Positions 24,501 through 54,066 of a stretch of DNA of 64,000 bases are shown here, piece by piece. The position numbers were made by a program, and so were the translations under genes. Location of the stretch: contig NC_087248.1 in NCBI RefSeq assembly GCF_037042905.1, positions 11,036,001 to 11,100,000 on the forward strand, in the 5' to 3' direction. The number at the start of each line of letters is the position of its first letter. The stretch's first letter is position 1. Under the pieces are notes generated by a model. The model searched no databases and was not told where the DNA came from. It saw nothing but the letters and a program-made list of their open reading frames with translations. Source of the stretch: Lytechinus pictus (lineage: Eukaryota).

Positions 24501-25019
24501 AACAACAAATCCAATAAAAAAGTAGGGACCCAATTCTAAGTACTGTATTTATTAGAAGTACTTAATTTTATTTGACCAAAGAATACCGATTGTGATAAAG
24601 ACTAGCTTGGAAACACTGGTCATGTGACTGTGACTAGCAGCTAGACAGATACTGCATACTGTACCACGAAAACAAACGTCTCTCTAATGTTAGGGACAAC
24701 GGTACATTCGGTATTTGCTCTATCAAAATCCCTACATACCATTGCGAGTGCGTCGAGCGCGTCCGTTGATCCTACGAAGCCCCAATAATGCATCCCTCTT
24801 GACTGATAATTTCACCCTAAATTGAGTTATTTCAGGTAGCTATGATATATTTGGCATTAAAAGGATCGGTAATTATTTGTCAGTAATTATTTAGTATTCT
24901 ATATTTTCGAATGGCTTACCTCTACTTGTTCTTTGAATGGGAAAATATCGTACTTTGTCCTTGTATTCCACATGAACTGCAGAGTTTGTATGTGTATAAA
25001 GTCAATGGGGAAATTCAAA

Positions 25020-25470
25020 CTTTTGCACACGCGACCCGTCACCATGACGTCACCAGGATTGCGTGTGAGCGAGCTAAGTTTGATTTGGGGGCGGCGCCCT
25101 CCAAAATTTAACCAATAAAAATTCTGCATTTGCTGCATCTTTTGGGATTTTCCCTAAATTCATGTCTCAGGGACCGTCTTGGAAGTGCGTGCTGAGCTGT
25201 ATAATCTTTTTGAAGGACCCACCCTATTCTACTTAAAGATATTCAATTAAAACATCTTGGGGCCCGTTTTGGGACTTTTCATTCTTAAAAAAGATGGTTT
25301 TGAGACGAAGTCTTATATCTAGATTAATTTAAGAAAAAAAAATTAGTGACTTTATTGTTAAATTTTAAAATGCAAAGCAAAAACCTCCATATGACGTGTA
25401 CGTGACGTAATTATCGTCATGAAGTTGAAGATCGCGCGAAGTGGTGGGAGGGGCCTATCGCGAACGTAGA
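25020..25470. promoter_or_regulatory. Candidate cis-regulatory region
   Basis: Locally CpG-rich. Full CRE TGACGTCA at 25045-25052, GC-rich box near 25087, CCAAT near 25112, and paired TGACGT sites at about 25392-25410. Confidence 0.35.
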
Positions 25471-27397
25471 CCATGTATTAGTCTTGATTCAGGCAATTTT
25501 TATGATTTGTAAAGTTCGTTGAAACTCTGTAACGTTGTGAACGGATATCATCCAAATAAAATAAATGAAAATAATTTTAAAATGTGAAAGGATGAAGGCT
25601 AGCACAATCTTTCTCTTAGGAACATTCAGCCCCCCCCCCCTCCTCAGTTACAAATGTTAATCACGTGTAATCGCCGTGATACAAGGAGAGATGTTTTGGA
25701 AGGTCATGTGTGTGTGAGATATTGCACATGGCATAATGGCGGCATATACGTGTGATACAGGGAATTCTGTACAAGGATGTTTACACTTGTGTGTGAGAAG
25801 GTCTGTGACCGAGATGGTGGCATGGGAATAATGGAGTTAGAGTGGATTAAAAAACTACGTGTGTAAAGCATGGACCTGTACGTTGCAACTGCACATTCGC
25901 TCTGGGGGCTAAATCCCGGGGCTAAATTAAAATAGGGGAATCCCGGTGTGTATAGCTTGATTAGTAATCAATTGTTAAGGCCTACTAAAGTATATTTTGT
26001 TTATTAAAAAATCTAAGAAATCAATGTTTTAATTTGCAATGTTTACGCACAATATATGTATATATGCCCTCTCACAATCACACACATTTAAGATTTTATT
26101 TTTAACAGTAACATACTGATTGTTGTAAAATTAGGATACAAAAATTACTCTACGAGATGTCAGTTATTTTTTTATTTTCTAATGTATAGGCGGAGGGGGG
26201 CGGGTGGGTTCCCTCGGTCCTGCGCGCCCTTGCTCTTAGCAAAAATAAATAAATGGATATTAAAAAAAAAAAATCCTAATTGGAGAAAATTTTCCCCAAA
26301 ACGTACGTATATATCTCCTATCTCCTGAATTACAATAATAATTTCTGCCAATACCTGCAAAGAATCCGTTTACACCCCCCCCCCAAAAAAAACCCTGAAA
26401 ATTGGAGGCCATTTATATGATTGAGCGGAGAGTTGGAAAAAAAATGTTTTCGGTGAGAGACCCCCCCCCCCCCGCTGACTTTTACATCCGTAATCTGCTT
26501 TTTTATGGGAACATTTTTCTAACACTTCGTCTATCATGCCCTGTCATGAGTGAAAATATAGTTCAAACAGGGATATGCAATATCCCTGGTTCAAACATAT
26601 GGACCTTTTAAAGCGTTGACAAAAAGTGACAAAAAAGTCACGCTATTATGGGGCTTTTATACCAATGTAACCCGATATACATGTAAATAAATTAGGTATC
26701 CAATGCGACTGTCAAATTGAATTTACATCTGATTTCAAGGGATCGATGTGCCATAGGCCTATATTGATTTTTTTTACACGGGGAGGGGGCCTACATAGCT
26801 CGTTTACATTTCTCGATTTGACTCCTTTTTCCGCCATGAGTCTCAACTTCCTACATGGGATATTATGGAGGATCGATGGGGTGGCCCTTAATTACCCCTT
26901 TTATATAGCTATCCCAGTAGAGGTCAGGGGTTGGATTCTGAATTAGGGTGGGGGTAAGGGTATCATCATGTAACAACGATCAGACGAGAATACTCACTTG
27001 TTAATTATTATATGAAAAGAGTTGCCCCCTCCTTCGGTGTCTCTGGTCGGTGCCGGTGAGTTTTCCAAAAGAAAAATATTCTGAAGTTTGCTATGGGGAA
27101 CTCTTCGTCAATTTTGAGATATGACATTATTTCACTTATTTCACAAGTCATAATCATGAACATAATACAAACAAATATTACATCAGAAGAATTAACATGA
27201 CGTACAAATAAGACATGGCATCATTTATTTAAATTGAATAATACGGCGAATAGAAACATGAGGGAACCTGCATTAAAAAGCAACGTTTTATTTCTTCAGT
27301 CTGCAGGATCCAAAAAAATATGAACTCTTCATGCAGGACAGCACAATAAAAATGATAATTTGATTACGTAAAGAAATGCCAAAAATATCACAACTGT

Positions 27398-27595
27398 AAA
27401 GAAAGTAATTTACATGGACTTTTTCGGAATAAGGAGGGTGTGAAAAAATAAGTTGTTTCTGTGAAGTTGCCGCGGTGTATACTTCAAAAGATCAATGCAG
27501 AAGGGTGTTGACAACAAAAAGAAAGTAATTTACATGGATTTTTCGGAATAAGGAGGGTGTGAAAGAATTTGTTTCTGTGAAGTTGCCGCGGTGTT
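27398..27595. repeat. Local direct duplication of about 80 bp (period about 120 bp)
   Basis: AAAGAAAGTAATTTACATGGAYTTTTCGGAATAAGGAGGGTGTGAAA...GTTTCTGTGAAGTTGCCGCGGTGT occurs twice. Confidence 0.9.
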
Positions 27596-28427
27596 GACAG
27601 ACATGAAACAGCCTGTCCGATAAGGTCTTGGAAGCCAGACATTCCGTCGTCTTCGGTAGGAACATTTCATGAGATAAAATGAGTCATGTTTTTTTTTTGC
27701 GTTTTCACTTCTGATTGGGTCAAAGCATTCATGTGCTGACCAGTGAAAAGCACCCCTTTCCATTGATCTTTTGAATGATCCCATGATGGGTTAGTGTGTT
27801 CTAGCCTGAATTATATAACACGAGAATACCCCCAGGGATCCCCGAGCTGGTTGTACCCCTGCCTTTCCGTTCCAGGGAATACTCCAGATGGACGAGGGCA
27901 TTTACCACATCAGGTAAGAATCATCCATTACAATTCATAATTATTAATATGTAATTCAAATTTTATTTTCCACTGCGGAAATGTTCAAACCTTATTAATG
28001 TATTTTTATGTTATAGAGAGAGAAATCGAAATAAACATCCCTAAACCTCACTTAAATTATTTTAAATTGCAGTATATACAAATATTAATTTTAAATGTTC
28101 TTAATAACTTGATTCTTTTCCATGAAAACATTTTTTTTTCATACACCGACCCACTCTTTCTAAAAAAAAAAAAAGGGAAGATACGTCCCGGTTTACGTCG
28201 TTATATATAGGCATACAGAGATAAGATCAATGGCTTTTACCGTTATCTGAGATTTTTTTTAATCATGTACGTATATAAAATAAAAAAGAATATATAGGGG
28301 GCGCCGAACCCAAAATCCCAACAATTAACTTAAACTTTTCCTTCAACCCTGCATGATGTCACTCAACACCCCCTCCCCACTCCCCCCCCCCCAAAAAAAA
28401 GATAGCAGTTACCGAGGAAAAAAACAT

Positions 28428-29440
28428 TCATGAGCAAGGTCGACATCCCGTCCTCTTCGTAAGTGGGAACAATTTCACGGGAGAATGCTAATGGTAGAGA
28501 CTGGGAGGTAGTTTTATTTTTCTTGGGGGGGAGGTAAGGCGACCGTAATCAGATCGATAAAAATATCATAACTGTCTCTACCCCCCCCCCCCCTCTTTCC
28601 TTATTTTTACGAGCGTGTAACACCTCAGTCACATTTTGATCTGATTTACGGCGGCCGTACGGTGGTCGAACACAGCCGTTTTATTCATTTCTATTCAAAC
28701 TATTAGTAACCAACCCACCTAGTATGATATAGCTATTTTTTAAAATCTTTAAAACGGCTGTTTTTTTTTATTCACCGTTCTGCCACCATAGAGCAAATGT
28801 GACTGTAGTGTATCTGATATAAAAAGGAAACATTTACAGAAAATAACAGAAAAGGAAGAGGAACAAAAATAACCTATATAAATCCAAACAACTGACTCTT
28901 TTCCTCCATAATGTCCCTCAACGCCCCCACTCCCAAGACAGAGCTCCCTGTCCCTACCAGAGCATTCTCCCATAGCGTATTTCTTTGTTACGTACGAAGA
29001 GGGGGGGGGGGGGGGGGGGGGGAGAGAAAAAGAAATATGAGAACATGATCGAGTAAGGTCGACATTCAGTGGGAACAATAAAGGTGAACATATTCTCGTG
29101 GGAGAATGATCTGGTAAGGACAGCTAGGTGTGGTTTTTTTCTGGGGGCGGTAATAAGATCGAAAAATGAAAAATAAATAATCATCACTATTTTGACTTGG
29201 TCTTCACCCCCCCCAAAAAAAATTTAAGGGGGTTGAGTTGAGCCCCTGTTACCCCCCCCCCCCCTCCCCCGCGTACGCCACTGGAGCCTGCAACAGGCCT
29301 CTACCTCGGTCACATTTGTTTATACGACGGCCGTTTTATTCATTTTTATTCAAACCACGGAGCTATTTAAAATGTTAAGACGGGCGTTTTTTTTTTACTC
29401 GTCGGACGGCCTTTGCATGAGCAAATGTTCTGAGGTAGTA
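28428..29440. repeat. Old diverged tandem duplication (period about 620 bp), each unit carrying a small MITE
   Basis: AAGGTCGACAT...AGTGGGAACAAT...GGGAGAATG...AGATCGA...ACCTCRGTCACATTT...GCCGTTTTATTCATT...GAGCAAATGT occurs at 28428-28810 and 29043-29437. Confidence 0.75.
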
Positions 29441-30245
29441 GGTTGCCAAAATTAAGAGACAGAGCTCATGACATGATTATCAGTTCGATGAATTAGATGT
29501 CAAATATCACCATACTCTAGATCAAATTTAAAGTAACTTAGTAAGGAATCAAATCATAACAATGCAACAATAATCTAACAACAAAAATATCTGCATTCTG
29601 CTCTTCTTCGGGCTTGATGACTTCACAAATAAATGGCACACAAGCAATATCTGAAAACAATTTAAATACTACTTTTCCCTCTCTGTTTTCTCTCATTTCC
29701 TTGACTCACTCACGCTTTCTTTCTGTTCTATCAATGTTCGATGGACGTACATTAAAAGTGACTTTAACTGGGTGGAAATATTTCGGGACCGAGATCATTT
29801 ATTGAATAACGGCGCGGGACAGCGACGTCTTTTACAAGACTATATTTTGGGGTCATCGGACTTACGCGATGCGCCAGCGATCACCTGATATTTTCGCGCA
29901 GCTGTCTCCGTCCCAAACTGTCTGAAACTGGCCGCAAAGCTTTATTGACACAAAGCAGCGCGGACGGAGTCAATGGGGAAATTGAACGTTTTGGGCCAAG
30001 TTTGAACCCTTTTTTTCTAATTTCATTTACATGTTGGAATAACAAGACTTGTCTGAATGGTTTAGTACCACTTATTTTAATCAAGTAAGTGATTTTAATA
30101 TTATAAAACGAAGGAGATTTTTTTTTGTTTGTCTTCATTGGGGTCCCTACTAATGTAATTCCTGTTCGAAGTCGAAGAAACACAAACAATAAAGCCCAAC
30201 TAGGTCAACGTTTCATTCCGAGTTTCAGTGAAGAATATTCGTGCA

Positions 30246-30461
30246 ATGACCACCTCATCGAACGAGTCTTTATTTCGATCTTCTTTCTATCATATCACAG
30301 CCAACAAGCTGGTGTTGTTAGGGGTTCTTTTGCTTGGGATCATCGGGGCATCTATGGCGGCGGAAAAGAAGCGAATGGGTGGGATGACAGGCGTGACGTC
30401 GCTTGATAATGGTTTAGTTAGCGACGAAGAAAAGAATCTAATTCAGGGATTGCTTGATAAG
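30246..30461 (+). CDS. Stefin (cystatin-A/B-like) coding exon 1, with signal-peptide-like N-terminal extension
   Basis: Encodes MTTSSNESLFRSSFYHITANKLVLLGVLLLGIIGASMAAEKKRMGGMTGVTSLDNGLVSDEEKNLIQGLLDK and ends AAG|gcaagt (GC donor, phase 0). Contains the conserved stefin GG and LxDK. In-frame ATGs at 30246, 30354 and 30375; the true start is uncertain. Confidence 0.85.
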
Positions 30462-30519
30462 GCAAGTATACTTTAAAAAAGATAGTGAATTAACATTCCA
30501 ATTCTGGCCGCTCCAACAG

Positions 30520-31458
30520 TAGAGGCGCACGGCCAATATGGGAGACTGTCTCCCGAGAGAGATTATCTTCAATATCAGACTCACAGTCACACTTAGTCTT
30601 AGACAGCTGGCAGCCGTCTGTTTTGAGGAGTTTTTTAACATTTTTTTTTTAAAGTTCTCCTCATACACAGACGGCTCGCTAGCGTGCAGCCACCATTAGG
30701 GGACTTGCAATGCAAAATCCCCCCGTCGGGGCTCTTCAATTTTTGTCTTTAATCAATAAAAATTTTGAAAATTAATGCGACCAAAATGCAAATTGATATT
30801 CCCTCTTGGCATTAATTGCCAAGAAACGGAGAAAAATCGAGTTAAAAGGAACAAAAACAGTGACTTACCTCGGCTGTCGCGCAAATTCACTTCCCCGTTT
30901 TATCCGATCTTAAGTACATAAACATATGGCCATTGAGTCCCCTGTACAGATCGCGCTAGAACTTCGGTCTCTGTATTTGGTGAGTGAAGCCAACGGAGTT
31001 CAGCTGAACAACCAACATAACAGAGACCGAAGCTTTTGGTCTAACTCACACTCACAGACTTGTTGTATTTGTAAATAATTTGGGTATCCAATTTCAGAGA
31101 CGGTCTCCAGTTTGGGAGACCAATTTCCTTTGTTTACATTTGCTGCAAAAGGTTTACCTCGGCGGCAAATAAAAATGTGATTGGCAGATTCCTCATGAAA
31201 AATTACCCCTTTTCACCGTTACTTTAAAAATTCACTGTCTACTTTTGAGTTTTGTTTTGATAAGGATTTTTGTTGTCATCCACACACAAAACAAATGGGC
31301 TTCTGACCTAAGACTTAACTAAGTGAGACAAAATTTTGGGTGGAAAAATAACGCTTTTGTTGGTGTTGTTTCCTTTGTTCTTTTGCAAAGCAAGTCTCCA
31401 ATATGGGAGATTGTCTCCCCTATTGGAGAGAGTCTCCCATATTTGCCGTGCGCCTCTA
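30520..31458. mobile_element. Non-autonomous hAT-like element in stefin intron 1
   Basis: TIR TAGAGGCGCACGGCMAATATGGGAGAC; 8-bp flanks TCCAACAG / TCCAATAC (degenerate TSD); repeated GGGAGAC/GTCTCCC subterminal motifs. Confidence 0.8.
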
Positions 31459-31776
31459 TCCAATACTAAGTAATTTCTTCAACTTTTTTTTTGTTTTTAG
31501 TCAATTAAAATCATTGAAAATTGGTACAGTAATGTACTACCAACTGATCAAGGACTTTTCATTGATTGAAAACTAAATTCTGCGTGTGTGTGTTTAATGT
31601 ACGGTAGACCCCAATGGAGTTTTGTAACAATCAGAAATGATTATTTACATCTGGGACCAACCTTCCAAAAAAAAAAAAGATGTGATATTAAGGGGGGCAT
31701 TATTTTTTGTCTGACAACAAGTTGTCAGATCCGACAACAACTTTCCTTGATTTTGATTGGCTTTAAAAAAAATTAA

Positions 31777-32385
31777 AGCTCAAGTCCACCCCAGCAAAAT
31801 GTTGATTTGAATAAATAGAGAAAAATCAAACTAGCATAACACCGAAAATTTCATCAAAATCGGATGTAAAATAAGAAAGTAATGGCATTTTAAGATTTCG
31901 CTTATTTTTCACAAAACAGTGATATGCACAACTCAGTGACATGCAAATGAGTCAGTCGATGATGTCCATCACTCACTATTTCTTTTGTTCTTTATTGTTT
32001 GAATTATACAATATTTCAATTTTTACAGATTTGACCATATAGGGACCGACTTGACTGAACCATATAGTATTAAACAATGCTAATTCCACATGTATAGAGA
32101 GGAATTAATCACTGTTTCACTTGACAATAAGGAGAAAATTTGAATATTTCATATTTCATATAATAAAATACAAAAGAAAAAGTGAGTGGATGACGTCATC
32201 AGTCTCCTCATTTGCATACCGACCAGGATGTGCATATATATAACTGTTTTGTGAAAATAAGCAAATCTTCAAAATGTCAAAACTTTCTTATTTTACATCC
32301 GATTTTGATGAAATTTTCAGTGTTATTCTTGTTGGATTTTTCTCTTTTTATTCAAATTATTTGTTTGTTGGGGTGGACTTGTCCT
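31777..32385. mobile_element. TTAA-flanked long-TIR MITE (Kolobok-like termini) nested in a GGGAGCGTTTCAT MITE
   Basis: ttaa|AGCTCAAGTCCACCCC...GGGGTGGACTTGTCCT|ttaa with imperfect arms over 150 bp (GAAAATTTCATCAAAATCGGATGTAAAATAAGAAAGT and its reverse complement). Confidence 0.85.
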
Positions 32386-32989
32386 TTAATAGCCAAGATC
32401 AAGGCTTAGGTTCGGCAGTGTTAGTGTTACTAACTACGACTATGTAAACTGTCGGATAAAACGTGCGACAAGTCCTTTCATGAAACGCTCCCCAGGCATG
32501 CCAGGGCTAGAGTCTGTTTTACATGTATGTACAGTGTAGATCTACCCTGTTCTCATAACTAGTTTACTGAAACCGGTTAAGGAAACCAGTTTGGAAAAAA
32601 ACACTTGACGTAAAGCGATCTTGACTTGTTGCTCCGGGAACGCTCTCAGTGGGATGACATGTTTCGCGCGAAATTCAAAACACAGACCCGCAGTGTAAAC
32701 ATTCTACACACAGTATGTTGAGTAGCGCACTCAAAATGTGTGAAAATTGCTTCCTGAGGAATGCTTGTCACCTCACTTACACTGAAACCAGTTTAATGAG
32801 TCAGAATGTTCTTGAAAACTACATCGCGAGGTGGTTTTCCGAACCGGTTTGGAAGATACATGTAGCTTCCAAGACCACTTCGGCGGTTCTCATTACTAGT
32901 TTCCATGATTAGTTTCCACTTTCCAGTAAAACTAGTTTTATAATGGTAATGAGAACGGGGTCTAAGTCTGCTAAAATAATGAGAAGCCA

Positions 32990-35439: not shown

Positions 35440-35541
35440 GTAAAGCCCGATGCAGAGCTAGAGGCAAGAAGGAAATTCGAGGAATTGACACCTGTAGCCT
35501 ATGCAACCCAACTTGTGAATGGAGTCAACTATTTCATAAAG
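35440..35541 (+). CDS. Stefin coding exon 2
   Basis: cag|VKPDAELEARRKFEELTPVAYATQLVNGVNYFIK|gtatgt. 102 nt, with the QxVxG motif (QLVNG) and NYFIK. Confidence 0.96.
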
Positions 35542-40189: not shown

Positions 40190-40318
40190 GCCAACACCGG
40201 TGGCACTGGTGACAAAAGATATGTTGTCATTCGCCTGCACAAGTCATTCGGTGGTGATGTGACTGTCCACAGTATCCAGGTCGATAAGACAGAGGCGGAT
40301 CCTATTACATATTTCTAG
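40190..40318 (+). CDS. Stefin coding exon 3 (terminal)
   Basis: Polypyrimidine tract + cag|ANTGGTGDKRYVVIRLHKSFGGDVTVHSIQVDKTEADPITYF*. Typical stefin KT..DPITYF end; AATAAA near 40650. Confidence 0.96.
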   Translation, partial: ANTGGTGDKRYVVIRLHKSFGGDVTVHSIQVDKTEADPITYF

Positions 40319-53920: not shown

Positions 53921-54066
53921 NNNNNNNNNNNNNNNNNNNNNNNNNNNNNNNNNNNNNNNNNNNNNNNNNNNNNNNNNNNNNNNNNNNNNNNNNNNNNNNN
54001 NNNNNNNNNNNNNNNNNNNNNNNNNNNNNNNNNNNNNNNNNNNNNNNNNNNNNNNNNNNNNNNNNN
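53921..54066. other. Assembly gap (146 N)
   Basis: Run of N. Confidence 1.

What the first reader, a model, noticed from the sequence alone, without database searches (positions are those of the whole stretch)
30246..30377. Stefin carrying an in-frame signal-peptide-like extension
Seen: the gene has a type-1 cystatin layout (3 exons, phase-0 introns, QLVNG, no Cys, DPITYF end), yet upstream of the GG motif the same frame encodes K-LVLLGVLLLGIIG-ASMA, a basic residue, hydrophobic core and small-residue cleavage site. Established: stefins are normally leaderless cytosolic papain-family inhibitors; secreted ones are exceptions reported in a few invertebrates. Inference: this is a secreted or membrane-anchored stefin.
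Basis: partly seen in the sequence, partly recalled or inferred. Interest (0 to 1): 0.7.

Follow-up and report, generated by a model that had tools for sequence, protein, structure and literature searches.

The report
Sea-urchin stefin with export signal
A sea-urchin gene for a stefin, a protease inhibitor that normally stays inside the cell, carries a transcribed N-terminal hydrophobic signal conserved across urchin species, so it is probably exported or membrane-bound, which the papers I could search report only for stefins of parasites and a few protists.

Summary
The window is Lytechinus pictus. The three-exon gene (30246-30461, 35440-35541, 40190-40318, + strand) encodes exactly RefSeq XP_063954440.1, "cystatin-A2-like", 148 aa.

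Residues 42-148 are a classical stefin: GG, QLVNG, no Cys, and a C-terminal D-x-I-x-Y-F. Residues 1-41 are an add-on: a 21-aa n-region, a 17-18-aa Leu-rich core, then G-x-[AS]-x-A.

Stranded RNA-seq covers ATG 30246 at the same depth as the downstream ATGs and confirms the GC-AG intron 1.

L. variegatus, S. purpuratus and two unnamed urchins keep the extension in frame. Substitutions in the hydrophobic core avoid second codon positions (5/0/6). The canonical "MGG" Met is Val in three of the five.

Best reading: an ER-targeted stefin, probably cleaved after residue 38 and secreted. A signal anchor is possible. No localisation data exist, and no signal-peptide predictor could be run.

It is not a fluke/myxozoan "cystatin-like stefin", because it keeps the C-terminal motif and has no cysteines. 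It looks like an independent gain in a free-living deuterostome.

A splice form that removes ATG 30246 exists in one run. Its donor lies inside a polymorphic 5.46-kb transposon in the reference haplotype, so it is not a conserved switch. The scan also noted this splice separately (s1-311752).

The parts
30246..30461 (+). Exon 1 coding part (72 codons): N-terminal extension plus the stefin N-terminal trunk and start of the helix; ends ...LLDK at a GC donor
   Evidence: RNA depth falls to 0 after 30461, and loose ends at 30462 read the start of exon 2 in X1, X15, X19 and X20.
30246..30308 (+). n-region, codons 1-21 (MTTSSNES...ITANK). ATG context gcaATGa, with G at -3. An N-x-S sequon at residues 6-8 is kept in all five species.
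30309..30362 (+). Hydrophobic core plus c-region, codons 22-39 (LVLLGVLLLGIIG-ASMAA). Putative signal-peptidase site after codon 38 (30359|30360), with [AS] at -3, A at -1 and G at -5 in all five species.
   Evidence: Kyte-Doolittle mean 2.5 over 17-18 residues in every species; 11 Lytechinus/Strongylocentrotus substitutions, none at a second codon position.
30354..30356 (+). In-frame ATG, Met37 (tctATGg). A Met 6-8 residues before GG is kept in all five species; it would be the first in-frame start if ATG 30246 is skipped or spliced out.
30375..30383 (+). Met44-Gly45-Gly46. This is the position of a canonical leaderless stefin start, but the Met is Val in L. variegatus, S. purpuratus and one unnamed urchin. 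GG is the conserved N-terminal glycine of the inhibitory wedge.
35440..35541 (+). Exon 2 (34 codons) with the QLVNG first hairpin loop (35509-35523)
   Evidence: exon 2 sequence seen joined to exon 1 in RNA.
40190..40318 (+). Exon 3 (42 codons plus TAG) ending DPITYF, the classical stefin C-terminal motif
   Evidence: aligned to the C-termini of stefin A and cystatin-A2.
30150..30245 (+). Minimal transcribed 5' leader shared by all haplotypes. It contains an ATG-TAA start-stop at 30153-30158 and an in-frame TAG at 30201 that is AAG in the X19/X20 animals. The last 45 nt are 82% identical to S. purpuratus.
24691..30149 (.). About 5.46-kb young high-copy transposon inserted in the 5' leader of the reference haplotype. 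Ends TAGGGAC...GTCCCTA; 7-bp target duplication CTAATGT at 24684-24690 and 30150-30156. Absent from the RNA haplotype of X19/X20.
   Evidence: the loose end before 30150 in X20 reads the sequence that lies left of the element.
30085..30300 (+). Optional 216-nt GT..AG intron seen in one run. Its donor AA|GTAAGT lies inside the transposon and its cryptic acceptor cacag|CC inside codon 19. It removes ATG 30246 and the n-region.
   Evidence: X15 joint, depth 30.7, against an unspliced contig at 31.4. Not reported in X1, X19 or X20, and no depth step at 30301 in the raw reads. The donor region does not align to the other species.

Best explanation
The gene encodes a classical stefin (type-1 cystatin, MEROPS I25A-like) that in camarodont sea urchins has gained an N-terminal ER-targeting signal encoded within its first exon.

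Proposed mechanism:
- The mRNA starts upstream of ATG 30246 (shown).
- Scanning ribosomes meet that ATG first, apart from a start-stop AUG-UAA, and start there (inferred).
- The 17-18-residue Leu-rich core is recognised co-translationally and inserted N-in/C-out (inferred).
- Signal peptidase most likely cuts after residue 38, at G-x-[AS]-x-A (inferred).

The result would be a soluble, cysteine-free inhibitor of about 12 kDa whose N-terminus lies 5-6 residues before the conserved GG. It would sit in the secretory or endolysosomal lumen or in extracellular or coelomic fluid and block papain-family cathepsins there. If the site is not cut, the same insertion gives a type II anchor with the inhibitor domain outside. 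A separate leaderless stefin paralogue on the same chromosome can cover the cytosolic role.
For: - Transcription: stranded raw reads in X19 and X20 cover 30240-30259 at 17.9/20.2 and 30360-30379 at 17.2/20.1, with no step between the ATGs. The X1 contig (depth 227) runs 30055-30462 into exon 2.
- Annotation: the product equals XP_063954440.1.
- Conservation: the extension is present and in frame in L. variegatus (147 aa), S. purpuratus XP_784732.2 (146 aa) and two unnamed urchin contigs. The only indel is one codon, and there are no stops.
- Selection on hydrophobicity: in core codons 22-39, Lytechinus versus S. purpuratus substitutions fall 5/0/6 by codon position. By my arithmetic, (2/3)^11 is about 0.012. 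Every replacement is hydrophobic or small.
- Rate: dN/dS of the extension is 0.31-0.71, like the rest of exon 1 at 0.29-0.51.
- The canonical MGG Met is Val in 3 of 5 species, so a leaderless start at that position is not conserved.
- Signal-peptide anatomy is kept in all five: G at -5, [AS] at -3 and A at -1 relative to residue 38|39.
- Stefin identity: PDB cystatin-A2 8gqq at 3.7e-11 and human stefin A at 2.4e-10, aligned to the C-terminus. Residues 42-148 of the Atlas model match a 95-aa cystatin-A-like cluster at TM 0.90.
- A leaderless paralogue exists at G000:C4, about 30.317 Mb.
Against: - No signal-peptide or topology predictor was available, and no proteomic or imaging data were found.
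- The n-region is long at 21 aa, making a 38-aa signal, which is near the unusual 'long signal peptide' class (PMC2447879).
- The conserved basic cluster (KKR/QKR) lies on the C-terminal side of the core, and the flank charges are balanced. The positive-inside rule therefore does not favour N-in.
- A 17-18-residue core lies between typical signal-peptide and anchor lengths.
- Synonymous divergence in the extension is lower than in the rest of exon 1 (dS 0.39 against 1.05), and the adjacent 5' leader is also conserved. Part of the conservation may therefore act at the nucleotide level.
- RNA coverage does not show which AUG ribosomes use.
Confidence: 0.62

Rival explanations
1. Cytosol-facing tether. 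The hydrophobic segment acts as a reverse (type III, N-out/C-in) signal anchor or an organelle-surface anchor. The stefin domain then stays in the cytosol but is pinned to ER, endolysosomal or outer mitochondrial membranes, guarding them against leaked cathepsins.
For: - A conserved basic cluster lies directly after the core (EKKR, EQKR, HQKR, NQKR, MQKR), which is the side that usually stays cytosolic.
- Flank charges are balanced or slightly C-positive (my count).
- The short unfolded 21-aa N-terminus could be translocated.
- The N-x-S sequon at residues 6-8 is invariant in five species and sits about 15 residues from the core, enough for lumenal glycosylation.
- The domain has no cysteines, as cytosolic stefins do.
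Against: - The conserved G-x-[AS]-x-A end of the core looks like a signal-peptidase site, which has no role in this topology.
- The core is very Leu-rich and only 17-18 residues long, which in model proteins favours N-in insertion (my own knowledge).
- A leaderless cytosolic paralogue already exists.
- Conservation of the sequon is not statistically striking at 57% identity.
Confidence: 0.17
2. Mostly leaderless in practice. ATG 30246 is bypassed by leaky scanning, the start-stop uORF or 5' splicing. The main protein would then be an ordinary cytosolic stefin started at Met37 or Met44, with the upstream frame conserved for RNA-level reasons.
For: - A Met 6-8 residues before GG is kept in all five species.
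- One run shows a form without ATG 30246: the 30084>30301 joint at depth 30.7 against 31.4 unspliced.
- dS in the extension is low and the 5' leader is conserved.
- An AUG-UAA lies in the L. pictus leader.
Against: - ATG 30246 has a purine at -3 and is the first long-ORF AUG, while Met37 and Met44 have T and C at -3.
- Zero of 11 core substitutions hit a second codon position, and all replacements are hydrophobic. This is a protein-level signature.
- The splice donor lies inside a polymorphic transposon that is missing from other haplotypes and species.
- No depth step at 30301 appears in X19 or X20.
Confidence: 0.12
3. Annotation or assembly artefact: the hydrophobic frame is a chance open frame in a 5' UTR.
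For: Only automatic RefSeq models exist. The Pfam cystatin score is below its cutoff (17.2 against 22.2 bits).
Against: The frame is open and alignable in five sequences from at least three species and two families. It is transcribed and shows the codon-position bias.
Confidence: 0.03

Closest known systems
Classical stefins (type-1 cystatins: human stefin A/B; 'Cystatin-A2', PDB 8gqq)
   Same: N-terminal Gly, Q-x-V-x-G loop, no cysteines, C-terminal D/E-x-L-x-Y/H-F-type ending (DPITYF; DHLTYF in S. purpuratus), a domain of about 100 aa, and three exons with two phase-0 introns. Sequence match E 4e-11 to 2e-6 over the whole domain.
   Different: Carries about 41 extra N-terminal residues with a hydrophobic signal. 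The second hairpin has F-G/F-Q instead of the usual L-P. Classical stefins are defined as leaderless and intracellular (PMC2784779).
Cystatin-like stefins (CyL-stefins; FhCyLS-2 of Fasciola hepatica, and myxozoan 'atypical stefins')
   Same: A stefin-type domain preceded by a secretion signal. FhCyLS-2 secretion and signal cleavage were shown experimentally (PMC9986714).
   Different: CyL-stefins lack the C-terminal D/E-x-L-x-Y/H-F motif and typically have one or two disulfides. They have a 20-aa signal and are reported only from parasitic flukes and myxozoans (PMC9986714, PMC7913475). The urchin protein keeps the motif, has no Cys, has a 38-aa signal with a conserved n-region, and comes from a free-living deuterostome. 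This is most simply an independent gain.
Type-2 cystatins (chicken cystatin, cystatin C)
   Same: A secreted single-domain inhibitor with a signal peptide. After the predicted cleavage the conserved Gly would lie 6-8 residues from the new N-terminus, like Gly9 of chicken cystatin (my own knowledge).
   Different: No disulfides, no insert between strands, no P-W second hairpin, a stefin-type C-terminus and stefin gene structure.
Signal-bearing stefins of unicellular eukaryotes (Hyperamoeba, Capsaspora, Karlodinium)
   Same: A stefin that newly gained a signal peptide (PMC2784779).
   Different: Different lineages. [quoted passage not shown]
Long two-part signal peptides ('NtraC' model)
   Same: An extended, conserved n-region ahead of an ordinary h/c part (PMC2447879).
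   Different: That class was defined at 40 residues or more, mostly in vertebrate membrane proteins. Here the signal is 38 residues and no function of the n-region is known.

Membership tests
Classical stefin (I25A) | Conserved N-terminal Gly and Q-x-V-x-G first hairpin | tested here: met
   G45-G46 and QLVNG in L. pictus; both invariant in the three RefSeq orthologues.
Classical stefin (I25A) | Significant sequence similarity to solved stefins over the whole domain | tested here: met
   8gqq 3.7e-11, 1dvc 2.4e-10 and 1stf 1.7e-6, all aligned to the last residue. Pfam PF00031 scores only 17.2 bits against a cutoff of 22.2.
Classical stefin (I25A) | No disulfides / no paired cysteines | tested here: met
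   No Cys in P0006, P0001 or P0008.
Classical stefin (I25A) | C-terminal D/E-x-L-x-Y/H-F segment (as worded in PMC9986714) | tested here: met
   DPITYF (Ile in place of Leu) in Lytechinus; DHLTYF in S. purpuratus.
Classical stefin (I25A) | Stefin fold (helix packed on a five-stranded sheet) | tested here: inconclusive
   In the Atlas model, residues 42-148 match a 95-aa cystatin-A-like cluster at TM 0.90. My own AlphaFold run on a 3-sequence alignment was poor (pLDDT 52).
Classical stefin (I25A) | Two introns at conserved positions (PMC7913475) | tested here: met
   Introns after ...DK and after ...FIK, both phase 0, in L. pictus, L. variegatus and S. purpuratus. The equivalence to the human positions was judged from the protein alignment only.
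Classical stefin (I25A) | Leaderless, intracellular | tested here: not met
   A 41-residue N-terminal add-on with a 17-18-residue hydrophobic core is included in the mRNA. Localisation itself is not testable here.
Classical stefin (I25A) | L-P pair in the second hairpin | tested here: not met
   KSFGG / KSFRD / KPFQG at the aligned position of stefin A KSLPG.
Cystatin-like stefins (CyL-stefins, PMC9986714) | Obligatory signal peptide on a stefin-like sequence | tested here: inconclusive
   Signal-like segment present and conserved. No predictor or experiment.
Cystatin-like stefins (CyL-stefins, PMC9986714) | Lacks the C-terminal D/E-x-L-x-Y/H-F motif | tested here: not met
   The motif is present.
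Cystatin-like stefins (CyL-stefins, PMC9986714) | Typically one or two disulfides | tested here: not met
   No cysteines.
Type-2 cystatin (I25B) | Two C-terminal disulfides and a P-W second hairpin | tested here: not met
   No Cys and no Trp in the protein.
Cleavable eukaryotic signal peptide | n/h/c layout with small uncharged residues at -3 and -1 and a helix breaker near -5 | tested here: met
   G34, [AS]36 and A38 in all five sequences. This was a rule-of-thumb reading, not a trained predictor.
Cleavable eukaryotic signal peptide | Actual cleavage and translocation | not testable with these tools
   Needs a microsome assay or N-terminal proteomics.

The most novel reading that the evidence does not exclude
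One gene, two compartments. Besides the exported form started at ATG 30246, urchins regularly make a leaderless cytosolic stefin from the conserved internal Met (Met37, 6-8 residues before GG) by leaky scanning. The conserved n-region, N-x-S sequon and K-R pair directly before x-GG could add further control, such as a reverse-anchored cytosol-facing pool or a dibasic trimming step that exposes a canonical stefin N-terminus. That would be a deuterostome stefin with regulated dual topology, unlike any described cystatin.
Probability: 0.12. Interest if true: 0.65.

Novelty: new variant of a known kind. Interest (0 to 1): 0.45.

Why it matters
The stefin/cystatin split is taught as intracellular versus secreted. 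The known exceptions are treated as adaptations of parasites (flukes, myxozoans) or oddities of protists. A classical, cysteine-free stefin with a conserved export signal in free-living sea urchins would show three things: the boundary has also been crossed in deuterostomes; the gain happened on an otherwise unmodified stefin scaffold; and disulfides are not needed for a stefin to work outside the cytosol.

It also points to a candidate extracellular or lumenal regulator of cathepsins in urchin immunity, gut, eggs or skeleton formation. This can be tested quickly in a model organism whose embryos accept injected mRNA.

The three RefSeq entries are named only "cystatin-A2(-like)", with nothing in the name to mark the extension.

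Tried and rejected
- The Pfam family search of the own genome (PF00031) found nothing because the exons are split. Single-exon protein queries worked instead.
- The word-index protein searches returned only the two Lytechinus proteins, one low-quality model and S. purpuratus. I therefore could not establish the range beyond camarodont urchins (other echinoids, sea stars, sea cucumbers).
- P0005 (1307 aa) is a bacterial repeat protein and a spurious hit.
- P0002, "LOW QUALITY cystatin-B-like" of L. pictus, is a frameshifted partial duplicate of exon 1. It was set aside as an artefact of an older model. The present genome has a single exon 1.
- AlphaFold on a 3-sequence alignment gave pLDDT 52 and was not used.
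- The X1 loose end at 30084 first looked like splicing to another exon. It maps to another chromosome piece (C21) and lies in a high-copy transposon, so it comes from another copy's context, not from this gene.
- The X20 loose end before 30150 first looked like an upstream exon. It is the empty-site allele of the transposon insertion.
- The conserved acceptor-like tttcag|TG at 30223-30228 is not used: there is no loose end or depth step there.
- Synteny with the tubulin gene next to the S. purpuratus orthologue was not found in this window.
- Literature searches for urchin cystatin proteomics, the S. purpuratus accession, coelomic fluid, echinoderm stefins and mollusc stefin signals gave nothing on this protein.

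Full report
**What is there**

The + strand holds a three-exon gene: 30246-30461, 35440-35541 and 40190-40318 including TAG. Exon lengths of 216 and 102 nt make both introns phase 0. The intron 1 donor is GC (AAG|gcaagt) and intron 2 is GT-AG.

The 148-aa product has no cysteine. It carries GG at 45-46 and QLVNG in exon 2, and it ends DPITYF. Upstream of GG the same frame reads a 21-residue polar stretch, then LVLLGVLLLGIIG-ASMAA, then EKKR.

In-frame ATGs lie at 30246, 30354 (Met37), 30375 (Met44, the 'MGG' start of an ordinary stefin) and 30384. The frame is closed upstream by TAG at 30201 and TAA at 30156.

**Identity**

The model is letter-for-letter XP_063954440.1, 'cystatin-A2-like [Lytechinus pictus]'. 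The window is G000:C4:11036001-11100000 of an 812-Mb genome.

Against solved structures the protein matches 'Cystatin-A2' 8gqq (3.7e-11), human stefin A (2.4e-10) and stefin B (1.7e-6). The alignments begin at residue 63-67 and run to the last residue. Pfam's cystatin model scores 17.2 bits, below its 22.2 cutoff. The ESM Atlas model of this exact protein aligns residues 42-148 to a 95-residue cystatin-A-like cluster at TM 0.90. So the first 41 residues or so are an add-on to a complete stefin domain. My own AlphaFold run on three sequences was too poor to use.

**Is ATG 30246 in the mRNA?**

Yes. I laid four runs on 29960-30559. In two stranded raw-read RNA runs, X19 and X20, all reads have the first mate on the minus strand, as expected for a + strand RNA in most stranded libraries. 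Their depth is:

| Interval | X19 | X20 |
|---|---|---|
| 30240-30259 | 17.9 | 20.2 |
| 30260-30279 | 18.5 | 21.4 |
| 30360-30379 | 17.2 | 20.1 |

There is no step between the first ATG and the 'canonical' one. Depth drops to zero after 30461. In all four runs the loose ends at 30462 read the start of exon 2, which proves the GC-AG intron. A 1287-nt contig of X1 (depth 227) runs from 30055 through 30462 into exon 2.

The RNA haplotypes differ from the reference at five coding positions: S4T, L25F, D54E, G56D and E62D. The frame is kept, and the one change in the hydrophobic core is Leu to Phe.

**Is the extension conserved as protein?**

A profile-free search of 1.84 billion representatives with exon 1 alone gave five hits at E <= 0.001: four urchin sequences and one spurious bacterial repeat protein. 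A follow-up search added S. purpuratus XP_784732.2, 'cystatin-A2', 146 aa.

All of the following begin MTT-x-x-N-x-S and continue with a 17-18-residue core and G-x-[AS]-x-A, then a basic pair and x-GG:
- L. variegatus (147 aa, two genomic loci);
- S. purpuratus;
- two unnamed urchin contigs from Logan assemblies.

The only length difference in the extension is one codon, and no species has a stop.

dN/dS of codons 1-43 is 0.31-0.71, about the same as the rest of exon 1 at 0.29-0.51. The sharper test is codon position. In core codons 22-39, the 11 differences between L. pictus and S. purpuratus fall 5/0/6 on positions 1/2/3, and 4/0/6 for L. variegatus. Second positions decide hydrophobicity. 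Under equal rates, none of 11 has probability about 0.012 (my arithmetic). This is what selection for a hydrophobic peptide leaves, and what a merely conserved RNA would not.

The Met of 'MGG' is Val in L. variegatus, S. purpuratus and one unnamed urchin, so a leaderless start at that position is not a conserved option. A Met 6-8 residues before GG is present in all five.

**A caveat on conservation**

Synonymous divergence in the extension (0.39) is lower than in the rest of exon 1 (1.05). The 45 nt before the ATG are 82% identical between the two genera. Some nucleotide-level constraint around the start is therefore likely as well.

**How it most likely works**

Shown: the mRNA contains ATG 30246, which has G at -3. 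Met37 and Met44 have T and C at -3. The only AUG ahead of ATG 30246 in the shared leader is a start-stop AUG-UAA at 30153. The hydrophobic segment is maintained by selection.

Inferred: ribosomes start at 30246, and the Leu-rich core engages the ER translocon. The conserved Gly at -5 and small residues at -3 and -1 of position 38|39 in all five sequences fit signal-peptidase cleavage.

I could not run a trained predictor, so cleavage versus anchoring is a judgement. Several features argue for caution:
- the n-region is long (21 aa; compare PMC2447879 on long signals);
- the core length is intermediate between signal peptides and anchors;
- the conserved basic cluster lies on the C-terminal side, so flank charges do not favour N-in.

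A reverse anchor with a cytosolic inhibitor domain stays open (about 0.17). The invariant N-x-S sequon about 15 residues before the core would then face the lumen.

A second stefin gene lies on the same chromosome at about 30.317 Mb. It has a hydrophilic 20-residue N-terminus, QVVAG, also a GC donor in intron 1, and no classical C-terminal motif. It can supply a cytosolic inhibitor, which fits a division of labour.

**The 5' splice form and the transposon**

In run X15 a contig joins 30084 to 30301 (GT..AG, 216 nt skipped) at depth 30.7, beside an unspliced contig at 31.4. This removes ATG 30246. An in-frame TAA lies just before the donor, so the first in-frame start would be Met37 and the product would be leaderless. 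The scan also holds a separate note on this (s1-311752); I had found the joint before reading it.

The donor is not part of the ancestral gene. Window 24691-30149 is a transposon of about 5.46 kb with at least 15 near-full copies at 96-98% identity, ends TAGGGAC...GTCCCTA, and a 7-bp duplication CTAATGT. The X19/X20 animals carry the empty site. Their reads leave the reference at 30150 and read the sequence that lies left of the element, which also aligns with L. variegatus. This also shows that the native leader extends beyond the insertion point.

The donor region has no counterpart in L. variegatus or S. purpuratus. No depth step occurs at 30301 in X19 or X20. The leaderless splice form is therefore best read as an allele-specific by-product of a young insertion, not a conserved switch.

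**Comparison with what is known**

Kordis and Turk (PMC2784779) describe stefins as intracellular and leaderless. They note signal gain only in a few unicellular lineages and list echinoderms simply as having stefins and cystatins.

Bartosova-Sojkova et al. (PMC7913475) and Busa et al. (PMC9986714) describe signal-bearing stefins in flukes and myxozoans. The latter define 'cystatin-like stefins' by an obligatory signal, loss of the C-terminal D/E-x-L-x-Y/H-F motif and, typically, disulfides.

The urchin protein keeps that motif (DHLTYF in S. purpuratus) and has no cysteine, so it fails two of the three defining features. It is a classical stefin with a signal added. It probably works like a secreted stefin but is not a member of that group.

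I found no paper on this feature in urchins.

Two weak hints suggest that extracellular or N-terminally extended stefins may be more widespread:
- stefin-like proteins of 19-21 kDa predicted mass in oyster nacre matrix (PMC3361287);
- the nearest Atlas clusters, which are 123-124-residue 'cystatin-A' groups of molluscs and chordates (not inspected).

**Verdict**

The feature is real, expressed, and conserved since the Lytechinus/Strongylocentrotus split (tens of millions of years, my own knowledge). The protein itself is already in RefSeq, so what is new is the reading of its N-terminus. It is a new variant of a known kind, of moderate interest and readily testable.

Noticed in passing
window 24691-30149: Young transposon of about 5.46 kb with at least 15 near-full copies (96-98% identical) across the genome. 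Ends TAGGGAC...GTCCCTA; 7-bp target duplication CTAATGT; no ORF of 90 aa or more that looks like a transposase. It sits in the stefin 5' leader of the reference haplotype and is polymorphic: the site is empty in the RNA of X19/X20.
   Followed up: partly
window 30085-30300: A transposon-borne GTAAGT donor is spliced to a cryptic acceptor inside the signal-coding sequence in one run (X15). This would give a leaderless stefin from Met37. It is the same feature as scan note s1-311752.
   Followed up: partly
window 30462-30467; G000:C4 about 30318670 (paralogue): The intron 1 donor is GC (AAG|GCAAGT) in this gene, in L. variegatus and in the L. pictus leaderless paralogue, but GT in S. purpuratus. 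Use of the GC donor is confirmed by RNA.
   Followed up: partly
G000:C4:30315400-30318750, minus strand (L003, L010, L011): A second, leaderless stefin gene with a hydrophilic 20-residue N-terminus before GG and QVVAG. Its C-terminus ends ...QQTQAK without the classical Y-F motif.
   Followed up: partly
window 30520-30553 and 31425-31458: 34-nt terminal inverted repeats (94% complementary) bounding a MITE-like element of about 940 bp in intron 1. The repeat is heavily represented on both strands in RNA runs.
   Followed up: no
window 31772-32390: Large nested palindrome in intron 1: arms of 137 nt (85% complementary) and 83 nt (76%).
   Followed up: no
window 30153-30158: Start-stop element AUG-UAA in the 5' leader of L. 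pictus, present in both filled and empty alleles but absent in L. variegatus. The in-frame TAG at 30201 is AAG in the X19/X20 animals.
   Followed up: no
window 30261-30269 and 30369-30374: An invariant N-x-S sequon at residues 6-8, and an invariant K-R pair one residue before GG, in all five urchin sequences. These are possible glycosylation and dibasic processing sites; both are untested.
   Followed up: no
L008 and L009 (L. variegatus CM031018.1 at 27.45 and 43.70 Mb): Two loci encode the identical 147-aa protein with identical 120 nt upstream but very different intron lengths (21.7-kb and 8-kb genes). This is either a recent duplication or an assembly duplicate. L. pictus has one copy.
   Followed up: no
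window 53921-54066: Run of 146 N (gap or masked); left alone.
   Followed up: no
(ESM Atlas): The nearest feature clusters are 'cystatin-A-like' groups with 123-124-residue representatives (molluscs, chordates), about 25 residues longer than ordinary stefins. They may be further N-terminally extended stefins.
   Followed up: no
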